A stretch of DNA of 64,000 nt. It comes from Glycera tridactyla. Taxonomy: Eukaryota. The number at the start of each line of letters is the position of its first letter. The stretch's first letter is position 1. This document shows, one piece after another, positions 22,146 through 31,893 of the stretch. Position numbers and translations under genes: made by a program. The stretch is taken from the NCBI GenBank assembly GCA_965644265.1, contig OZ286466.1, positions 24,118,001 to 24,182,000 of the forward strand, read 5' to 3'. The notes under the pieces were generated by a model, which searched no databases, was not told the origin of the DNA, and worked only from the letters and a program-made list of their open reading frames with translations.

Positions 22146-22671
22146 CCCCCACCCATGACCATGGCTTAAATGAACATACAGCCGTATGTGATGTGATTCA
22201 CCGTTATTATTACTATTATTATTATATTGTGTAAAGGAAAGACCCAACGAATTCACTGCTCCAAAGATGATCATTTATTCCACTGGTACAGGCATCAACA
22301 GGAACATGCAGTTGATTGATTGATTGATTTTGGTTTAACGTCCTTTCAACACCAAATGGGTCATATCGGACTGAAGTGTTCTATTGTACTATGGACTTAC
22401 TCTTCTATACAAATCATTGTATCCAGGAAGTAATGTGTGGAAATAAATATTGGGTTGAAAAATAAATAATTAAAAATGTATTTTTTCATTTTCTATTTTT
22501 CTCAATAAAAATGAACTATTAGCTGAAGAAAGGAGCACTGTTCCGGGGGCAATCCCCTACTCTTTTCGAAAAGCAACAGTGGATCTTTTATGTGCATGTA
22601 GCATAGACACATACTCACACGGCCGGCCTTTGTTTCCCAGTCGGCGTGCACTGGGCAAGCATATCAATGAT

Positions 22672-25600
22672 TCATATCCTTCGAAAAAGCCCGATGTGTT
22701 TGAGAAATTCAAATATGTTTTGTATGTTGGCATCCTCAAATAATTCTTTCATGTCTTGAACATCATAATGGGTGATTCTTGTCTGTGCAAAGTCTGCACA
22801 TTCAAGTAGAATATGCTTTACAGTCAGCTGGCACTGACATGCTGTGCACTGTGGTGGATCTTCTTTTTTCATAAGATAACTATGAGTCAGATGAGTATGT
22901 CCCATTCTCAGGCGAGACAGGACAATCTCCTCTCGTCTACCCTGATGTCTCGTAATCAATCTACCTTTGACAAGTGGTCTAAAGCTATGGAGTTTATTTT
23001 TATCCTCTTTATCCCATCTCTTCTGCCATAAATCATCAATATATACTTTGATGGAGGATTTGAAATCCAAGTAATGTATTGGCATTACAGTGATTGGTAA
23101 ATTGAGCGCCACTTTTGCAGCTCTATCGGCCGCTTCATTGCCTGGTATTCCAATGTGACTGGGAATCCAGCACAATCGAATAGTTTTCCGATGCTCCTCC
23201 TGAAGAATTCGATATTCATGCAGGATTCGAATGAGCATCAAATTTTTGAGGCCATAGCCCTGCATTGCTTGCAATGAAGAGAATGAGTCTGAGAAAATTA
23301 TGATCATTTTGATGTTGGAATTCTTTATATGGTCAAATGCCAGTAATATTGCCTTTAGCTCAGCTGAAAAGATAGTTGCCCCATTTGGGAGTCTGCTGTA
23401 GTATGTTTGGCTATTAGTGTAAGCAGCAGCTGACGTTTTCTCTTCATGTTTTGAACCATCTGTGAAGATGGCTTCATGGTCTCTGTATTGAGATCTTATA
23501 TCTAGATAGCCACTTTTATAGATTGTTGGAGTAGTGGTCTCCTTGGGATACTGTGTCAGATCCAGGTTGATCATCGGAGGTTCGTGAGTCCATGTGGGAA
23601 ACACTGGTGTCATCTGGGCTACAGGTAAGATGCCCATGTCAAGTTTGTCCAGATGTAGCTGCATTCGAATTCCCATTGTTCCTGTGATATGTGGTTTTGC
23701 TGCAAATGAATTTCGGAATCTAGGCTCAAATATACACTCATATGCTGGATTCTCTGGATTTGATCTTAGTTTCAAACAGTATTGTAGAGCTAATTTATCC
23801 CTACGTAGGGTCAAAGGTGGCTCTTCTGCTTCCACACAGAGGCTCTCTGCTGGTGATGTGCGAAAAGCCCCAAGGCATATGTGAAGTGCCTGGTTTTGGA
23901 TAGGGTCGAGCAACTTCAAGTTTGTCCTACAGGCTGATCCATAGACTATGGAGCCATAATCAAGCTTTGATCGGATGAGTGATCTATATAGCATGAGCAG
24001 TGTTTTGCGATCTGCTCCCCAATCTAAATGGGATAAAACTCGGAGTAAGTCAAGTGCTTTCTGACATTTAGTCTTCAGCTGTAGGATATGTGGTTTGAAG
24101 GTTAACCTTCGATCAAATATCATTCCCAAAAATCTTGTCTGTTCCACCACTGGGATCACAGATCCATCTAATGTGAGTTCTGGGTCTGAGTGATGTCTTG
24201 TTGTTGTGCAGAAATGCATACAGACTGTTTTGGTTTTTGAGAACTTGAACCCATTTTCATCTGACCAGGTTTGCAATTTGTTTAAGGATTGCTGCAACTG
24301 TCTCTCAATGATTCCAATGTTGCTTCCTCCATAACAGATGAGAAAGTCATCTACATATAGGGAGCAGTTCGTGTCTTGTGTGAGACACTTGACAATACTA
24401 TTAATTTTAATACTAAACAGTGTGACTGATAGGATACTTCCTTGGGGAACACCCATTTCCTGTTCAAACTCATCTGAGATGATGGAACCCAGACGAACAT
24501 TGAATGAACGATCCTTGAGGAAGTTCTGAATGAACATAGGAAGTCGGCCTCTGAGGTTCATGTTATGAAGGTCTTTCATTATGCCAAATTTCCAAGTGGT
24601 ATCATAGGCCTTCTCTAGGTCAAAGAAAACAGCAACGAGGTGCTGTTTCTTGATGAATGCTTCACGGACATATGTTTCAAATCTGACCAGCTGGTCAATA
24701 GTGCTCCTTCCCTTGCGAAAGCCACTCTGGAAGGGTGTGAGGAGATTGTTTGATTCCAGGTACCATACCAATCTGATATTGATCATGCGCTCAAATGTTT
24801 TGCAAATGCAACTGGTGAGAGCTATGGGTCTGTAATTTGATGGGTCAAATGGGTCTTTGCCTGGTTTAGCTATGGGGATGACTATAGCTTTCGACCATGA
24901 TAAGGGAAAAGAACCAGTGATCCATATATTGTTGAAAATTTTTAATAGCTGGCTGAGTGCAGACTCGGGGAGTTGTTTCAATAACTGGTAGGGCACATCA
25001 TCAGGTCCTGGAGATGTGTCATGTGCCTTGTTGAGAGCATTCTCAAGTTCATGCAGTGCAAAAAGACTATTGTAATTTCCGGCATTAGCGGAAGCAAAAT
25101 TAAGTTTCTTTTTTTCTGCCTGTTGGCGGTATTTCTGGAATTTGGCTGTGTAATGATTTGTTGCAGAATTCCTTGCAAACGTCTGACCTAGAGCATTAGA
25201 GATCTCTATAGTGTCTGTGATGACCTGGTCATCTATTTTGAGATGGTGAGTGCGAGGACCTCCCATCTTGCCTCTGATCTTCCTGAGCATATTCCAGGTT
25301 TTACCTATAGGAGTGTGGCAGTTTAGCTTGGAGATGAAATTCCGCCAGCAATGGCGTTTGCTGGAACGGCAGGTTCTTCGGGAGCGTGCTTTCAAGATCT
25401 TATATTTTGTGAGATATTGTCCTGAGGGTTGCCTTGCAAATTCTTTCAAGGCTTCTTCCTTTCATTTATTGCCTCCCGACAATCATCTTCAAACCATGGT
25501 TTGGGATGATGGCCCTTTTTAATAGAGGTCTTGGGTATGGAATGGGATGCTATCCCACACAGTATTTCAGTGAAATAGGTAATTGGATCATCATGATTCA

Positions 25601-26348
25601 AAAAGTTATGATGGGATATTCTGGCCTCACAGAGAGCTTCAAATAGAGGCCAATTTGCTTTCCTGAGGTTCCATGATGGTATCTTTTCAGGAATGGTGTG
25701 GTCATTTCTCAAGATTATTAGAAAGTGGTCACTTCCCCGAGGGTCTGCTTCAGTCTCCCATGAATAATCTATTAACAGTGTTGGGTGGCATACTGATAGA
25801 TCTATTCTGGTAAATGTACCAGTGCCACCATGTAGGTATGTTGGAGATTTATCATTCCATAGACAAAGATCATTTTGAGATAAAAAGTCTTCAACTTCTT
25901 CACCTCTACGATCAGTATTATCTCCACCCCATAAGACATTGTGGGCATTAAAGTCTCCCAATATCATGGCTGGGGCTGGTAGCTGATGATAGAGGTCATT
26001 CAATTTTCTTAAATCAATAGGCTGACTTGAGGGAAGATATATGGAACAGACAGTAATAGCTTTGTCTAGAGTGATACAAGCAGCCACTGCTTGGAGTGTA
26101 GTATTTAAATTCACCATGGATTAAGGGATATTTTGTCTCACAAGTAATGTAACACCACCATGAGGGCGATGCTCTTGATCTACAGATGCCGGGAAATCAT
26201 AATTGATGTAGTTACGTAGTTCAATATTATCAGGCATAAATGTCTCTTGAAGACATAAGACTGACGGGTTGAGCTTTGAAATCAATAAATCTAGTTCATG
26301 CTTATCAGAACGGTAACCTCGAATATTCCACTGGATCAAAACAGACAT
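22672..26348 (-). pseudogene. LINE ORF2 (APE endonuclease, RT, RNase H, CCHC) with one nonsense codon and one frameshift
   Basis: QWNIRG, LCLQET, GDFNAH, SDH; FDLEKAYD, GVPQGSILS, YVDD; IFTDGSK, WIPSHIGIPGNEAAD; TAA at 26121-26123, frameshift near 25449. Confidence 0.93.
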
Positions 26349-26400
26349 TGTAATTCACTAAAAAAAATATCAGTTCGATCCTTTTCATCTTCAACTAATG

Positions 26401-27790
26401 TCATCTATCCGGTGGTTTTTTCCTGCTGGTTTTGTCACCTCTTTTCTGTGACATTTCTACATCCATATGCTCTTCTGTCATTGATTCATGGCTTTTCGAT
26501 TTTGGCAGAGGAGGTTGGCGCCTCAGAGGGATTTTTGTTCTCCCCAGGATGGTCATATTGGAGGGATCCTCGACTGCAACCTTCTTGGAAGGGTTTTCAT
26601 CTGGCTTTTTGTCTCTCTCTTGCTTTTTCGCTTGATCTGCATATGATGTTTTTGTTCTCGATTCTGGTTTGTCTTTATCAGTATTTTCTTTATTCGGTGT
26701 GGCCAGTTTTGCTATCTGATCCTGCAAAAATCTTAGTTGTGCTGCCATGCTGTCCAATTGTTGGCGTAGTATCTTACAAGATTGGCAAGCTTGTTGATGT
26801 TGATTGCCTTGTTTGGCAGCATTGGCCTATGTGCCTCCTGAAGGTATTTTAGGTTGTGCTAGTTCAATTAATCTCCCTGCCCTCTTTGAATGTGATACCT
26901 TCCATGACCTTTTTCTTTTGTATTTCATATTCTTGTTTCCATATTGGGCAGTTTTTGTCACGGGATAAATGTTTATCACCACAATTGGCACAGCATATAT
27001 CATTTTGGCATGTATCTTCTTTGTGTTCAACTCCATTGCATCTCCCACAACGTTTTGAACCCCGGCATGTTCTATTGTTGTGTCCGAACTTCTGGCAGCG
27101 GTAGCACCTCAGTGGGCTTGGGATGTATGGCTCTACTGATTTTGACATATATGCCACTAGGACAGTGCGCGGTAATTTAGGTGTACCAAAAGTTATCAAT
27201 ATTGTATTTGTTGGGATAAATTGCCCCTCAGATTTTCTATTGAATCTTTTGACGTTGATGATATTGTTTTTCGAGTTCTTCCAGAAGTTCTTCTTCACTC
27301 ATATTTTTCACCTCAGGGCATCGAATGATACCCTGACTAGTGTTCATGGAACGATGAGGGGTGACTTTAATTGGGGTCGTGTGTAATACTGTCATGGAAA
27401 TCAATTGTCGTGATTGGTGTTGTCTATCACATTCTAATAAAAGGCCAGCTCGTGTACTTTTATTTCCGGTGATATCTTTTGAATACATTTCTGTATAACA
27501 AAAGGGTTTACATCTCCAATTTGCTTTTCAGGATCAGAACTTTGCATAAACAAAAATCGAGGCCAGTTGTCATAATTTGTCTCTACGTAGTCATCATACA
27601 CTTCAAATATTGGTCTATTCTGTTGGTGGTTTCTAAAATCTTCTTTATCATTGTTCATGCCAGTAGCATTCGCCAACATTGTGGCTCCACCACCTGCGCC
27701 AGCATATCCGACAGGTGGCGGGGGTCCTTGTTGGTCCCAGGCAGGCGATGACCCATCTGCCATGTTATTTTCCTTATAGGGACCTATCAT
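26401..27790 (-). pseudogene. LINE ORF1 (gag-like nucleic-acid chaperone), frameshifted
   Basis: PFVIQK, GIIRCP, PYIPSPLRCYRCQKFGHNNRTC, CGRCNGVEH, CANCGDKH..C in four fragments across different frames. Confidence 0.88.
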
Positions 27791-28165
27791 GATGATTAAG
27801 TGGGGGGACTGCCCCCAGGGAGATTTCTCCTGGCCACTCGCCTGAGACCTGCCCAGTATGGTTGAACCTATCTGGTATAGCTCCCAGGGTCCTCATGACA
27901 CTCAAGCCCCTCCACCATGCCAAAGGCAAGGCTCTCCCATGGAGGAGTGTAGCTCCACTTCGTCTGGCCCCTCACTCAAGACCTGTCCAGTATGGTTAAA
28001 CCTGTCTGGCATGGCTCTTGAGATCATTGAAGCACACAATCCCCACCACCGCGAAAAGGTGGAAGCTGTGGGGGGCAGGAACATGCAGAGAACATGCGGG
28101 TGGCACTAGGCCAAGTGACGACTCAATGCATGAGAATAATGTCAAAAGAGAACTCAGGAGAGAGT

Positions 28166-28201
28166 CCACGAAGCTTTTCGGACTGCGTCCTCATCAGGTG
28201 A
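28166..28201 (-). ncRNA. Minimal type-I hammerhead ribozyme motif
   Basis: UCAC-CUGAUGA-GGAC(GCA)GUCC-GAAA-AGCU-UC^GUGG: intact catalytic core, 4-bp helix II, palindromic helix III, 3-4-bp helix I. Confidence 0.8.
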
Positions 28202-29671
28202 TTTTTGATCTGACCTGAGTATTAAGAGCCTGAGCACCAGGGAATAGGAGCTATCCGGTGATGCTCAGGAGACATTAAGTACCCCTCTGGGGAATACCTA
28301 TACGGGTGCTGGGGAATATATACCTGGAATGGAGGGATTACCCACCCTCCGTCCAAGGATCAAATTGATCCCGGGCGGAAAGTTGGGGTCCGGAGTGTTT
28401 TGGAGGGCCGAGGTAATGGCAAAAAAGGGTGAGGGGTGAATGAAGAGGGAAAAAGCAGGAAAAGGGAAGAAAAAGGGGTGATGAATTGAATTAGTGTGGT
28501 GGAAGAATAACTGAGGGGGGAGCTGGAACTGGAAAAATTTAGTCTTGTAGGGAAAGGGTGTGAGGATGTAAGGAGGTCCATGTAAATGGAGTATAATTAT
28601 ATGAGGAATGGTCTGAGGTGAAAGCAGGCTCAAAAGTGGTAATGAGGAATACTGAAAATAATGATTAATATATTAACATTATTTTTTTTTTAAGTCTGTC
28701 GAAGCAGACAGAAGATATCAAAGCAAGTGAAACATGTCCTGAGTGAATGGAACAGGGTCACTTATATAGGTGGACAGACAAAAAGATCTAATTGAAGTGA
28801 TCAAGTGAGATCTAAAGCCATGCACAAGCCAAATTGAGGCAAACAAATCACAGGTCTGGTGAGTGAGATTAAGGTGAACAAATTGCAAGTTTTGATATCA
28901 TGCAAATAAAGTAAAATAAAGTAAAAGTTTGAGTCCAGGATGCGGCAAATCAGTCCCTGGTGTATCCAAAGGATGCAATCTGCGTGAGCATGACGAAGTG
29001 CAAGTGAGTCCAGAGAAAATTGCCGTGATCTGATTAAGGCAAATGGCACGAATAAAGCCGGAAAGAGACCGGTATGCGGAATTAAGTCTGTTCATCTGAT
29101 CTGACCAAGTTAACGTCTCTTAGTCTCAGGCACGCAGGCAAATGAGCATGGGATAATAAAATACACAAACTACACGAAATAAACAGTGATTGTGGAGCAA
29201 CACTAACTGATAGATAGAACCGGGGGGATCCCTCCGATGGGTCCCAACATGAAACATCGATGAAACTAGAAGTGAACCAACTCGGAAACGGTGAAGGAGT
29301 GCGGGGTGCGCATACATATATAGCAAGAGTTCCCAAATCACCGAGGCACGAATAGGTGGTGTACCACACTGGAATGGATGTCCGAAATTGACCTCAATAT
29401 TAGTAGTCCCAATGCACAGGCCAGGTTGTAGTCCACGGATGAGTGTGTGTATACATGAGCATATAGATATACATAAAATTATACATAAAGAATTATACAT
29501 AGGAAATGGCATAGGTGCATGAGTGAACAAAATCTGATGCCGTCATGGTTAGCTAAACCCGGGTGCTGGTGATATCAAACGGCTACAGACAACGACCAGC
29601 CCAGATGAGTGAACGGAGGAAATACTGATCGCGGCAGAGCCTCATGAGATGGTCAGTGCGGAAACAGATGG

Positions 29672-31660
29672 TTACTGGAGGGGAACTTGAGGAAGACCAT
29701 AGCGGGCCAGGGTGGCCCGCAGAATGGCATCCTTGAGCTCCTGTACCTTGAGATCAATGAGTTTATTATAGTGTTCCTGGTCCCTTGGCGGGGACTGAGA
29801 GAGATTGAGCGAGGGGGGAGGCGCGTGTGGAGGTGGTATGGCAAGGTGTGGTGTGGTCTGAGCAGTGGAAGTTAGGTATGGATAATCTGCGGATGACAAG
29901 ACTGATGGAGCCATGGTTGGCGTGGCTAGAAGGGAGTGACCGTGTCCTGAACGGATGCGATGAGTGCCATGAGTAGGTGATGGTGGTGAGGTCAATGTCA
30001 GATCCGGGTGGTTGGGGTCATAAGCCTGTGACACAAAAGGAGGATGCTGGATCTGTGTACCTTTGGCATTGAAGCCCGAAACTGTGGGAGAGGAGTGGCT
30101 GTTGATCGGCGGAGTAACAGGAATCACGTTAGAGGGAATTGTGGGTCGCATGGGTGAAACAATCTTGATGGGAAGTGTCTTGAGTTTCTTGATCCCCGGT
30201 AGGGGGGCTGGATCCAAGGTTGAGGGCAGAGGGGCTGAGGTAGGAGGTACTGGACAAGCCGGTAAAGAAGATGGAGAAAGAGATGTCGGAGAAGGCGGAG
30301 AGGAAGAAGATGAAGACGAAGAATCTTCCATTATTACAATGGGATCCTCCCTGGTCGAGGGTAAAGGAGTTAAAGTTAAGTCAATGCATGTGTCATCCAT
30401 TGGGTCGTCAAGACGATGTGGAATTGTGGACTGGGTTTACGATCCAACTGAAGAAGACGGCAGAGTAGTAGGTGGAACCACTATGACAGGGACCAAGACG
30501 GTGGGAGACAGAAGTGGCTCCTGGCACAGTGTAGACAGTTTCTGAGATGAGGTGGAAATGCACGTGTCCAATGACTGTGTGGACACCAAAACGCTTGCTG
30601 AAGAGGCCGTGGTGAAAATATGATCCGAGGAGTGGGGAGACCTCGAGCTGCCAGGGGTCTGTGACGAAGGCGGAGAGATTGCGGATGTGCAGCGTGGGTA
30701 GGAGCAGCAACGTGGAGTAAGGTTGGCGATGAAGAGCAAGCCGGCATAGTGGCCGGAAGGCATTCAGTTGAGTGGAGCGGTGTCCAGATGATCCAGGGTG
30801 CGGCGCCGAGTTGGAGCCAAAATGGGTATGGCTCGAGGTGGAGAAGGAGATTTAGTGTCACGAGTGGGAATGGATGTGGCACGTGGTGAAGAAGGAGATT
30901 TTGTATCTCGAGTCTGAATGATATTCGAAGAAGAAACTGGAGTGAATAAGTGCCTGTGGTTGTGATCCTCAGGGTCAAAATCACAGAGCTTGCGATGAAG
31001 GGGATCCTGAAGGATAGCCAAGGTGTTGCGAATCTTGGTGGGAGAGTCCTTGGATTGGGGGATGTGTATGGGAGCCGGGGCCGTGGCCGGCTTCTTGGAT
31101 GGTACATTATTTCCAGCCGCTACTCGTAGTTTGACTCCTGGTTCCAATTGATGGACCGAGAGAATCCTGGGAGAAGCAGGAGCAGGAGCGAGGTCGGCGG
31201 TGTTAGAGTCAAACGGACGAACTATGGTTAGCAAATTATCCAAATGACTGGGATGCATGAGGCCGACATGTTTCCTCAGACAATCAAAGCAAGCATTCTG
31301 ATAATCACAGTGGTGGCATATGTAGTGGTAGATCTGGTTAGAATGGTATAAGCGCATGTGTCTGAGAGCATTTGATTTAGGGGTGAACTTCGACGTGCAT
31401 GTCCCGCATGAGAATTTCTTGAATTTAAGACCGGTTTTCCGTTTGTTGGCTTTCTTGTTGCGGTGTTCCTTGGCCAGGTCTTTCAAAACCTTGGTGGCTA
31501 TCTCGTCGTCTGATGCATTAGGTTCTTCATTGTCTGAACTGAGAGGAGAGATCAAGGGTTCCAAGTTGCCCAGCGAGTAGTTGCAAGGGGAAAAGTCTGG
31601 ATCAGCCGGATCTGGATGCTTGACATGAGGCTCTGGAACTGGATCAGAATCGGAGGAGTA
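29672..31660 (-). pseudogene. Intronless C2H2 zinc-finger plus Pro/Ser/Thr-rich reading frame with two premature stops
   Basis: ORFs 30764-31564, 30437-30763 and 29672-30400 share one frame; two C-x2-C-x12-H-x4-H fingers. Confidence 0.6.
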
Positions 31661-31735
31661 TTATGATTATTATTATTATTATTATTATTATCATTATTAT
31701 TATTATTATTATTATCATCATCATCATCATCATGA
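31655..31735. repeat. (ATT)n(ATC)n microsatellite next to a gap
   Basis: Direct reading. Confidence 0.95.
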
Positions 31736-31758: not shown

Positions 31759-31893
31759 NNNNNNNNNNNNNNNNNNNNNNNNNNNNNNNNNNNNNNNNNN
31801 NNNNNNNNNNNNNNNNNNNNNNNNNNNNNNNNNNNNNNNNNNNNNNNNNNNNNNNNNNNNNNNNNNNNNNNNNNNNNNNNNNNNNNNNNNNNN
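31759..31893. other. Assembly gap (N-run)
   Basis: Run of N. Confidence 1.

What the first reader, a model, noticed from the sequence alone, without database searches (positions are those of the whole stretch)
28166..28201. Minimal hammerhead ribozyme upstream of ORF1 of an I/Nimb-clade LINE
Seen (minus strand, same sense as the LINE): UCAC CUGAUGA GGAC-GCA-GUCC GAAA AGCU UC^ GUGG. All core nucleotides are present, with predicted cleavage between 28170 and 28169, about 380 nt upstream of the ORF1 ATG. Established: minimal type-I hammerheads with a palindromic helix III are typical of Penelope-like elements and cleave as dimers. The ribozymes reported at 5' ends of non-LTR elements (R2, RTE, L1Tc/Ingi) are HDV-like. 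Inference: either this LINE family processes its 5' end with a hammerhead, which would be unusual, or the motif ends the upstream zinc-finger-ORF unit. Only one copy is present here, so cleavage would need trans-dimerisation.
Basis: partly seen in the sequence, partly recalled or inferred. Interest (0 to 1): 0.75.

Follow-up and report, generated by a model that had tools for sequence, protein, structure and literature searches.

The report
Hammerhead ribozyme of a LINE-interrupted Penelope-type retroelement
The self-cutting RNA motif is real, but it belongs to an older Penelope-type jumping gene that a LINE later inserted into, so it is an ordinary member of a known ribozyme class and not a new way for LINEs to trim their RNA.

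Summary
The motif is present exactly as described, on the minus strand at 28201-28166, with cleavage predicted between 28170 and 28169. It is not a chance match. Its 28-nt core occurs about 650 times in this 2.04-Gb genome, against 0 for the reversed control.

It does not belong to the LINE.
- The LINE (28075-22312) is flanked by a 13-bp target-site duplication.
- The ribozyme-bearing element resumes right after the LINE, at 22311.
- At least 35 other LINE copies begin at the base matching 28075, and none carries the motif.

The host is a front-truncated retroelement. It holds a C2H2 zinc-finger ORF remnant, a long untranslated region, the hammerhead, about 270 nt of conserved 3' end, and then an (ATT)n microsatellite.
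- Copies are truncated at the 5' end.
- They sit in (ATT)n microsatellites, in tandem or tail-to-tail.
- Relatives of the zinc-finger ORF lie about 0.95 kb downstream of GIY-YIG endonuclease domains.

These are Penelope-like hallmarks.

The ribozyme is less minimal than described. Helix I is long and interrupted, and it co-varies between subfamilies. Only helix III is the dimer-type palindrome.

Other windows of this genome already gave scan notes on Penelope hammerheads and on zinc-finger-carrying Penelope elements.

Verdict: a new member of a known kind, of low to moderate interest.

The parts
28166..28201 (-). Hammerhead core as reported. It comprises proximal helix I (UCAC/GUGG), CUGAUGA, helix II GGAC-GCA-GUCC, GAAA, and the palindromic AAGCUU helix III segment. 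C17 is at 28170, with cleavage between 28170 and 28169.
   Evidence: Sequence read. 647 genomic copies against 0 in the control. Pair counts.
28152..28220 (-). Extended ribozyme domain. It adds an asymmetric internal loop (UCAAAAA / AC), the AGA/UCU helix, and the distal helix ACUCAGG/CCUGAGU of helix I.
   Evidence: alignment A1 columns 13-81. In one search the 5' and 3' flanks of the same copy pair better than flanks from different subfamilies (permutation p about 0.00025).
28076..31659 (-). Upstream part of the ribozyme-bearing retroelement. Its 5' end is truncated at an (ATG)n(ATA)n microsatellite at about 31660. It contains a zinc-finger ORF remnant, a Ser/Pro-rich ORF remnant, about 1.5 kb of repeat shared with other copies (29591-28076), and the hammerhead.
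30764..31564 (-). Remnant (266 aa) of the element's ORF, with two C2H2 zinc fingers. Its N-terminus was lost by 5' truncation.
   Evidence: Translation, with weak zf-C2H2 Pfam matches. There are 123 scored genomic relatives, with intact frames of 552-652 aa. A homologue lies 2.5 kb upstream of the hammerhead in L072.
29672..30400 (-). Ser/Pro-rich 242-aa frame. It is probably a frameshifted continuation of the zinc-finger ORF.
   Evidence: tblastn matches to the corresponding region of L069 and L070. No Pfam family.
28076..28088 (-). Upstream copy of the LINE's target-site duplication, CTGCATGTTCCTG.
22312..28075 (-). The inserted LINE, 5,764 bp. It has broken ORF1 pieces, APE (25446-26117), RT + RNase H (22672-25449), and a (TCAA)n 3' tail. 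It is younger than the element it split.
   Evidence: Pfam, junctions, and the shared 5' end of other copies.
22299..22311 (-). Downstream copy of the LINE's target-site duplication, CTGCATGTTCCTG.
22226..22311 (-). Conserved 3' terminus of the ribozyme-bearing element, displaced by the LINE. It includes AATAAA at 22279-22274 and ends in ...TACACAAT.
22203..22225 (-). (ATA/ATT)n microsatellite abutting the element's 3' end. The same kind of repeat abuts its 5' end at about 31660-31733.

Best explanation
The hammerhead lies in the 3' untranslated region of an old, front-truncated copy of a Penelope-type retroelement lineage. This lineage carries a C2H2 zinc-finger ORF downstream of the RT/endonuclease gene.

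Shown here:
- The element once ran uninterrupted from about 31660 to 22226 on the minus strand.
- A younger LINE then inserted 94 nt downstream of the ribozyme's cleavage site. That accident put the ribozyme in front of LINE ORF1.

Inferred from published work on Penelope-like elements and type-I hammerheads:
- In active source elements the ribozyme would cut the element's own, often multi-copy, transcript.
- Helix III cannot close within one molecule (2 bp plus a 2-nt loop). Two copies, in tandem or in trans, would pair their AAGCUU palindromes into a 6-bp helix and cleave as a double hammerhead, possibly helped by the element's protein.
- The long, co-varying helix I and its conserved internal loop would hold the fold.
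- The copy in this window is a solitary relic and probably has no present function. It does nothing for the LINE.
For: (1) LINE insertion.
- Intact copies (L036, L037, L017, L018) align to window 28667-28076 and then continue at 22311-22204.
- 13 bases are matched on both sides, which is the target-site duplication CTGCATGTTCCTG.
- Other LINE copies start at the base equal to 28075 and lack the motif.

(2) One element type.
- Zinc-finger ORF homologues lie 2.3-3.4 kb upstream of the hammerhead on the same strand in at least 5 loci. The coordinates come, and the sequence of L072.

(3) Penelope hallmarks.
- The hammerhead is in the sense orientation near the 3' end.
- Copies have varied 5' truncation points and one conserved 3' terminus.
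- (ATT)n-type microsatellites lie on both flanks.
- Copies occur in tandem and tail-to-tail.
- These features match Craig et al. 2021 (PMC8557442) and the ATT cleavage preference in Frangieh et al. 2024 (PMC11167929).

(4) Link to RT/endonuclease.
- In five places a GIY-YIG domain lies 918-993 bp upstream of a zinc-finger ORF relative on the same strand. About 0.04 such pairs are expected by chance.
- Zinc-finger relatives also stand in tandem arrays with a 6.9-kb period.
- In two of 30 GIY-YIG loci, a CUGAUGA-stem II-GAAA block with no adjacent cleavage-side half lies on the sense strand 0.3-0.6 kb past the endonuclease domain.

(5) Selection on the ribozyme.
- The core is identical across subfamilies whose flanks are only 65-80% alike.
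- Between subfamilies A and D, the only non-coding DNA still alignable is the hammerhead block and the 3' terminus.
- Helix I flanks co-vary.
Against: - No RT or GIY-YIG sequence was read in any copy of this particular hammerhead lineage. The copies I could fetch are 5'-truncated or run off the locus.
- No listed hammerhead place lies within 10 kb of a listed GIY-YIG place, though both lists are partial.
- The GIY-YIG-linked zinc-finger ORFs are only 33-51% identical to this one. The young 6.9-kb arrays on C1 do not carry this exact ribozyme.
- There are no compensatory changes in helix II or III, so those helices rest on conservation alone.
- Rfam does not recognise the motif.
Confidence: 0.8

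Rival explanations
1. The unit made of the zinc-finger ORF and the hammerhead is a separate, RT-less retroelement. On this view it is not just a truncated Penelope copy. It keeps its own DNA-binding protein gene and ribozyme, and is copied in trans by a Penelope (or other) reverse transcriptase.
For: No RT/endonuclease was seen in any readable copy. Animal hammerhead repeats are proposed to be non-autonomous derivatives of Penelope termini (bioRxiv 10.64898/2026.07.22.740005; PMC7229834). One copy truncated at q329 still has an open 610-aa frame.
Against: At least 5 copies continue upstream beyond the sequence I hold, so no common 5' end is seen just before the zinc-finger ORF. Relatives of the ORF sit at a fixed distance of about 0.95 kb behind GIY-YIG domains. 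A two-gene autonomous element whose 5' truncation removes the RT gene explains this more simply.
Confidence: 0.13
2. The repeat is a non-LTR retrozyme. Short tandem units, each with a hammerhead, are transcribed, self-cleaved and ligated into small circular RNAs that serve as transposition intermediates.
For: The hammerhead is type I with a 4-bp helix II and a short palindromic helix III, like canonical metazoan retrozyme ribozymes (PMC4209133, PMC7229834). Some copies lie in tandem, for example 623 bp apart at C10:77838502 and C10:77839125.
Against: Most copies are dispersed, 5'-truncated and up to over 3.5 kb long, with an ORF. The one tandem pair read has an (AAT)n microsatellite between the units. 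That fits two insertions at one site better than a rolling-circle multimer. No RNA data could be obtained.
Confidence: 0.04
3. The LINE family uses the hammerhead to process the 5' end of its RNA.
For: Only position and orientation support it: same strand, 94 nt before the LINE's first base and 379 nt before ORF1.
Against: At least 35 other LINE copies begin at the base equal to 28075 without the motif. The LINE is bounded by a 13-bp target-site duplication inside the ribozyme-bearing element. All hammerhead copies examined lie in the other repeat.
Confidence: 0.01
4. The motif is a chance match with no ribozyme function.
For: A relaxed core pattern is expected 0.62 times per window by chance. 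Rfam gives no hit. The minimum-free-energy fold of the monomer is not the hammerhead fold.
Against: There are about 650 copies against 0 in the control. The core is invariant across diverged subfamilies. Helix I flanks co-vary. The architecture equals that of published Penelope and metazoan type-I hammerheads.
Confidence: 0.01

Closest known systems
Hammerhead ribozymes of Penelope-like elements (Cervera & de la Pena 2014, PMC4209133; Craig et al. 2021, PMC8557442; Frangieh et al. 2024, PMC11167929)
   Same: - It is a type-I hammerhead in the sense strand near the element's 3' end or terminal repeat.
- Helix III is reduced to a palindrome, so two copies must pair.
- Host elements are 5'-truncated, tandem or inverted, and inserted in AT-rich or microsatellite DNA.
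- There are hundreds of copies per genome.
   Different: - The typical 'min-HHR' of metazoan PLEs has a long helix II (7-8 bp), an extra unpaired base before it, and a short helix I.
- This one has a 4-bp helix II with no extra base.
- Its helix I is long and interrupted, with a conserved internal loop.
- The host lineage carries a C2H2 zinc-finger ORF. I found no such ORF described in the PLE papers I read.
- The RT/endonuclease of this lineage was not seen here.
Canonical metazoan type-I hammerheads in non-LTR retrozymes and satellite repeats of newt, Schistosoma, mussel and coral (Cervera & de la Pena 2020, PMC7229834; Li et al. 2026, bioRxiv 10.64898/2026.07.22.740005)
   Same: - Helix II is 4 bp.
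- Helix III has a 1-2 bp stem capped by a small palindromic loop.
- Helix I carries an internal loop that could contact loop 2.
- Cleavage as a dimer is expected.
   Different: - Copies are not organised as short (150-450 bp) constant-period tandem repeats.
- They are dispersed, truncated and up to several kb long, with an ORF.
- Proximal helix I is 4 bp rather than 6.
- No circular RNA evidence is available.
HDV-like ribozymes at the 5' ends of non-LTR retrotransposons
   Same: A self-cleaving RNA lies just upstream of a LINE coding region on the same strand.
   Different: - The ribozyme class is different.
- Here the ribozyme lies outside the LINE, beyond its target-site duplication.
- It is absent from all other LINE copies examined.

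Membership tests
Hammerhead ribozyme, type I | Catalytic core: C3 U4 G5 A6 N7 G8 A9, G12 A13 A14, the A15.1-U16.1 pair, and H17 at the cleavage site | tested here: met
   All positions can be read directly. The core is invariant in the 30 aligned copies, though these were chosen by an exact match to it.
Hammerhead ribozyme, type I | Helix II closed by the G10.1-C11.1 pair | tested here: met
   GGAC/GUCC with loop GCA. 100% of cells are paired but there is no variation. Genomic variants are mostly CpG-decay changes.
Hammerhead ribozyme, type I | Helix I formed by the 5' and 3' flanks, supported by covariation | tested here: met
   - CCAC/GUGG and AGA/UCU are each 93% paired, with 3 double changes in AGA/UCU.
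- The distal helices differ between subfamilies yet stay complementary.
- Mean duplex energy is -14.05 kcal/mol for flanks of the same copy, against -10.96 across subfamilies (permutation p about 0.00025).
Hammerhead ribozyme, type I | Helix III | tested here: inconclusive
   Within one molecule only 2 bp and a 2-nt loop are possible. AAGCUU is a perfect palindrome that pairs between two molecules in the cofold. There is no variation to test it.
Hammerhead ribozyme, type I | Match to the curated Rfam hammerhead models | tested here: not met
   No hit at the gathering threshold or at E up to 10. The models expect an intramolecular helix III.
Hammerhead ribozyme, type I | Site-specific self-cleavage | not testable with these tools
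   This needs in vitro transcription or RNA 5'-end mapping.
Penelope-like element (terminal region) | RT plus GIY-YIG endonuclease gene in the same unit | tested here: inconclusive
   - Neither gene is present in the readable copies.
- Relatives of the element's zinc-finger ORF lie 918-993 bp behind GIY-YIG domains in 5 places.
- Copies continue upstream beyond the fetched DNA.
Penelope-like element (terminal region) | Hammerhead in the sense strand near the 3' end or pseudo-LTR | tested here: met
   The cleavage site is about 270-300 nt before the conserved 3' terminus in all subfamilies.
Penelope-like element (terminal region) | 5'-truncated copies in tandem or inverted arrangements, with a bias for microsatellite or AT-rich targets | tested here: met
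   - 5' ends vary while the 3' end is shared.
- Copies lie in tandem (L036) and tail-to-tail (L005, L023).
- (ATT)n lies at both junctions in about half of the copies checked, against 12% of random windows in the same loci.
Non-LTR retrozyme | Short, constant-period tandem repeats (about 150-450 bp), each with one hammerhead | tested here: not met
   Copies are dispersed and of variable length, up to over 3.5 kb. The tandem pair I read is separated by a microsatellite.
Non-LTR retrozyme | Expression as small circular RNAs | not testable with these tools
   No RNA runs could be obtained.
LINE 5'-end processing ribozyme | The ribozyme lies inside the LINE and is shared by its full-length copies | tested here: not met
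   It lies outside the target-site duplication. It is absent from at least 35 other LINE 5' ends.

The most novel reading that the evidence does not exclude
The zinc-finger ORF plus hammerhead unit may be a self-standing, RT-less retroelement. It would keep a DNA-binding protein gene and a full type-I hammerhead (long co-varying helix I, dimer-type helix III) and be copied in trans by Penelope enzymes. That would make it a protein-coding intermediate between autonomous Penelope elements and the small non-coding animal retrozymes.
Probability: 0.13. Interest if true: 0.55.

Novelty: new member of a known kind. Interest (0 to 1): 0.27.

Why it matters
The striking reading, a LINE that trims its 5' end with a hammerhead, would have been a first. 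It is excluded, so this case should not enter the record as such.

What remains is a well-conserved hammerhead of the Penelope/retrozyme kind, which is a known association. Two points are worth keeping:
- The ribozyme combines a canonical, structured helix I with a dimer-only helix III. This places it between the 'minimal' Penelope hammerheads and the canonical retrozyme ones.
- Its host lineage carries a zinc-finger gene. Other agents of this scan also report Penelope elements of this genome carrying such a gene, and I found no mention of one in the Penelope papers read here.

The case also shows that a nested transposon insertion can mimic a functional juxtaposition.

Tried and rejected
- **Rfam.** Scans of the whole window and of 27900-28500 at E up to 10 gave nothing.
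- **An early misreading, corrected.** In one search all copies ended at window 28076. I first took that for the element's true 3' end. It was only where the query's homology stopped. Other copies run about 170 nt further, which led to the LINE-insertion finding.
- **Search for Penelope RT/endonuclease next to the ribozyme.**
  - Pfam on the upstream ORFs gave no family.
  - tblastn of all open frames of 44 loci against 30 GIY-YIG loci found only unrelated or distant elements.
  - blastn of the element against those loci gave nothing.
  - The 30 best GIY-YIG loci belong to other Penelope families. Only two carry a hammerhead core.
- **Search for relatives of the zinc-finger ORF.** A scan of 1.84 billion protein representatives returned almost only generic C2H2 proteins matching residues 45-105.
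- **Folding.** Minimum-free-energy folding of the monomer and dimer does not give the catalytic fold. It favours an alternative duplex in which GUCC pairs with the downstream GGAC. I treat this as uninformative for a hammerhead.
- **ATG inside CUGAUGA.** I considered whether it starts an ORF, as in the Anolis element. Here it is followed by a stop after 13-23 codons, so I rejected this.
- **Not run.** No complex prediction or structure prediction was run. No claim here depends on protein binding.

Full report
**Observation**

On the minus strand, window 28201-28166 reads UCAC-CUGAUGA-GGAC-GCA-GUCC-GAAA-AGCUUC^GUGG. Every conserved hammerhead position is present. C17 is at 28170, so cleavage would fall between 28170 and 28169, 379 nt before the ORF1 ATG at 27790.

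Taken alone, a relaxed version of the motif is not rare. It is expected 0.62 times per window by chance, and 14 of 100 shuffles reach the observed count. Rfam reports nothing at the gathering threshold or at E up to 10.

The motif is nevertheless real:
- The 28-nt core with up to two mismatches occurs 647 times in the 2.04-Gb genome, against 0 for the reversed control.
- A pattern that left stem II and helix III free returned only this sequence and variants that are mostly CpG-decay changes such as ACGC to ACAC or ATGC, CCGA to CTGA, and TCGT to TTGT.

**Whose ribozyme is it?**

The 30 fetched copies fall into about ten subfamilies. They share the block AGAUCAAAAACCAC-[core]-GUGGAYUCU but differ in their flanks.

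I first misread one result. All genomic matches to the window ended at 28076, which looked like a shared 3' end. It was only the end of the query's homology. In other copies the repeat continues for about 170-190 nt more.

Blasting intact copies against the window showed where that continuation went:
- The copies align to 28667-28076 and then resume at 22311-22204.
- Thirteen bases, CTGCATGTTCCTG, are matched on both sides, at 28088-28076 and at 22311-22299.
- The 5,764 bp between them is the LINE, which ends in (TCAA)n directly before the second copy of the duplication.

A query spanning the junction confirmed this. At least 35 other LINE copies, mostly 92-97% identical, begin at or within a few bases of the base equal to 28075. 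None extends into the ribozyme region.

So the LINE is a younger insertion into an older ribozyme-bearing element.

**The host element**

All subfamilies share a 3' terminus of the form ...GGAATAAA...ATCTTTGGAG...TTCGTTGGGTC.TCTTCCT.TACACAAT. An (ATT/ATA/ATC)n microsatellite follows it, and the terminus ends about 270-300 nt past the cleavage site. In the window this terminus lies at 22311-22226.

Other features of the copies:
- The 5' ends vary widely, from about 20 nt to more than 3 kb upstream of the ribozyme.
- The 5' junctions also often abut (ATT)n-type repeats. This held for about half of the copies checked, against 12% of random windows in the same loci. It also holds for the window copy at about 31660.
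- Copies occur in tandem with a microsatellite between them (L036) and tail-to-tail (L005 and L023).

Further upstream, the window's 266-aa ORF with two C2H2 fingers (30764-31564) belongs to the same element type. Homologous ORFs lie 2.3-3.4 kb upstream of the ribozyme on the same strand in at least five other loci (coordinates; sequence of L072). The window copy lacks the ORF's N-terminal part, so it is 5'-truncated within the ORF.

Between subfamilies A and D, the only DNA still alignable is the finger core, the ribozyme block and the 3' terminus. These look like the constrained modules.

**Link to Penelope-like elements**

The zinc-finger protein has about 900 candidate relatives in the genome. 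Intact frames reach 552-652 aa, and some relatives stand in tandem arrays with a 6.9-kb period.

I compared these coordinates with the GIY-YIG scan. In five places a GIY-YIG domain lies 918-993 bp upstream of a zinc-finger relative on the same strand: C51:36306630, C7:25843716, C4:135732909, C4:128558334 and C17:24706905. With 149 and 123 listed places in 2 Gb, about 0.04 such pairs are expected by chance.

The lengths also fit. An RT/endonuclease gene of about 2.7 kb plus the roughly 4.2 kb from the zinc-finger ORF to the 3' end gives the 6.9-kb period.

In two of my 30 GIY-YIG loci, a CUGAUGA-stem II-GAAA block with no adjacent cleavage-side half lies on the sense strand 0.3-0.6 kb past the endonuclease domain.

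The structural features match published descriptions of Penelope-like elements: a hammerhead near the 3' end, 5' truncation, tandem and inverted copies, and microsatellite targets (PMC8557442). They also match the ATT cleavage preference and internal initiation of reverse transcription downstream of the ribozyme reported for the Anolis element (PMC11167929).

Notes by other agents of this scan describe Penelope elements in this genome with a C2H2 gene between the endonuclease and the ribozyme. I treat these as leads. My coordinate test agrees with them.

One gap remains. I could not read an RT or endonuclease gene in this particular ribozyme lineage.
- The readable copies are truncated or run off the fetched DNA.
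- At least five copies continue upstream beyond my sequence.

**The ribozyme's anatomy**

Helix II (GGAC/GUCC, loop GCA) and the AAGCUU segment do not vary, so they are supported by conservation only.

Helix III can form only 2 bp with a 2-nt loop within one molecule. The palindrome pairs between two molecules in a cofold. This is the double-hammerhead arrangement described for newt, viroid and Penelope ribozymes (PMC4209133).

Helix I is more elaborate than reported. From the core outward it consists of:
- 4 bp, CCAC/GUGG. In the window the first base is U, giving a G-U wobble pair.
- A conserved asymmetric internal loop, UCAAAAA opposite AY.
- A 3-bp AGA/UCU helix.
- One or two distal helices of 4-11 bp. 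Their sequences differ between subfamilies but stay complementary: CAGGG/CCCUG plus GCUCGGGCUCA/UGAGCCUGAGC in subfamily A, GCUCAG/CUGAGC plus GGUCAU/AUGACC in B, GGGUAGA/UCUACCC in C, and ACUCAGG/CCUGAGU in the window.

Flanks from the same copy pair better than flanks from different subfamilies. The mean is -14.05 against -10.96 kcal/mol for cluster representatives, with permutation p about 0.00025. In the fixed-register part, 96.4% of cells are paired, against 41% or less when partners are slid.

The architecture is therefore close to the canonical metazoan type-I hammerhead. It differs from the 'min-HHR' typical of metazoan Penelope elements, which has a long helix II and an extra unpaired base (PMC4209133).

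**Mechanism**

Shown here:
- The ribozyme's sequence and fold are conserved.
- It sits near the 3' end of a retroelement.
- The LINE was inserted later.

Inferred:
- In active source elements the ribozyme would cut multi-copy or read-through transcripts as a dimer, perhaps assisted by the element's protein, as found for the Anolis element.
- The internal loop of helix I may contact loop 2.
- The window copy is solitary, truncated and split, so it is most likely an inert relic.

**Novelty and score**

Hammerheads in Penelope-like elements and in their non-autonomous derivatives are established (PMC4209133, PMC7229834, bioRxiv 10.64898/2026.07.22.740005). This is a new member of a known kind.

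The zinc-finger gene in the host lineage is the less ordinary feature. It lies outside this finding, and other agents of this scan have already reported such a gene in Penelope elements elsewhere in this genome.

Interest is 0.27.

Noticed in passing
window 22312-28075 (minus): This is a degenerate LINE of 5,764 bp. It has a 13-bp target-site duplication, a (TCAA)n tail, ORF1 broken into at least 3 frames, and APE, RT and RNase H domains. At least 35 other copies share its exact 5' end, in two groups. One group is mostly 95-97% identical across the whole queried 5' region. The other is about 93% identical and diverges after about 435 nt.
   Followed up: partly
G000:C10:47448078-47448675 (coordinates only): This is a seven-unit tandem array of an 85-bp segment. 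The segment equals window 28162-28078, the stretch starting 7 nt after the ribozyme cleavage site. The array lies directly downstream of an intact hammerhead copy at C10:47447958.
   Followed up: no
window 30764-31564 (minus); G000:C1:147038454-147077737 and C7:90814031-90835309: The two-finger C2H2 ORF family has about 900 candidate copies. Many frames of 552-652 aa are intact. Copies form head-to-head inverted pairs and tandem arrays with a 6.9-kb period. Five copies lie about 0.95 kb behind GIY-YIG domains. Outside this genome only generic C2H2 proteins matched.
   Followed up: partly
L002, L003, L005, L006, L010, L016, L025-L027, L030 around position 1500: A stop-free frame of 90-190 codons runs through the hammerhead in many subfamily A-C copies. 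It reads ...DQKPPDEDAVRKASW... and has no family match. It may be chance or a side effect of the conserved RNA structure.
   Followed up: no
L048:2393 and L061:2108 (oriented loci): Two Penelope loci found by their GIY-YIG domain carry a hammerhead core plus stem II, followed by GAAA. There is no nearby cleavage-site half. This fits the 'split hammerhead' layout noted by other agents of this scan.
   Followed up: no
L005 and L023, about 250-330 nt after the hammerhead: Two copies of the element lie tail-to-tail across one (AAT)n microsatellite. This suggests repeated insertion into the same repeat or into each other's tails.
   Followed up: partly
window 31763-31893: A run of N lies directly beside the (ATG)n(ATA)n microsatellite that bounds the element's 5' end.
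   Followed up: no
genome-wide: Most variant hammerhead copies differ from the founder sequence by CpG to TpG or CpA changes. This points to CpG methylation of these repeats in this genome.
   Followed up: no
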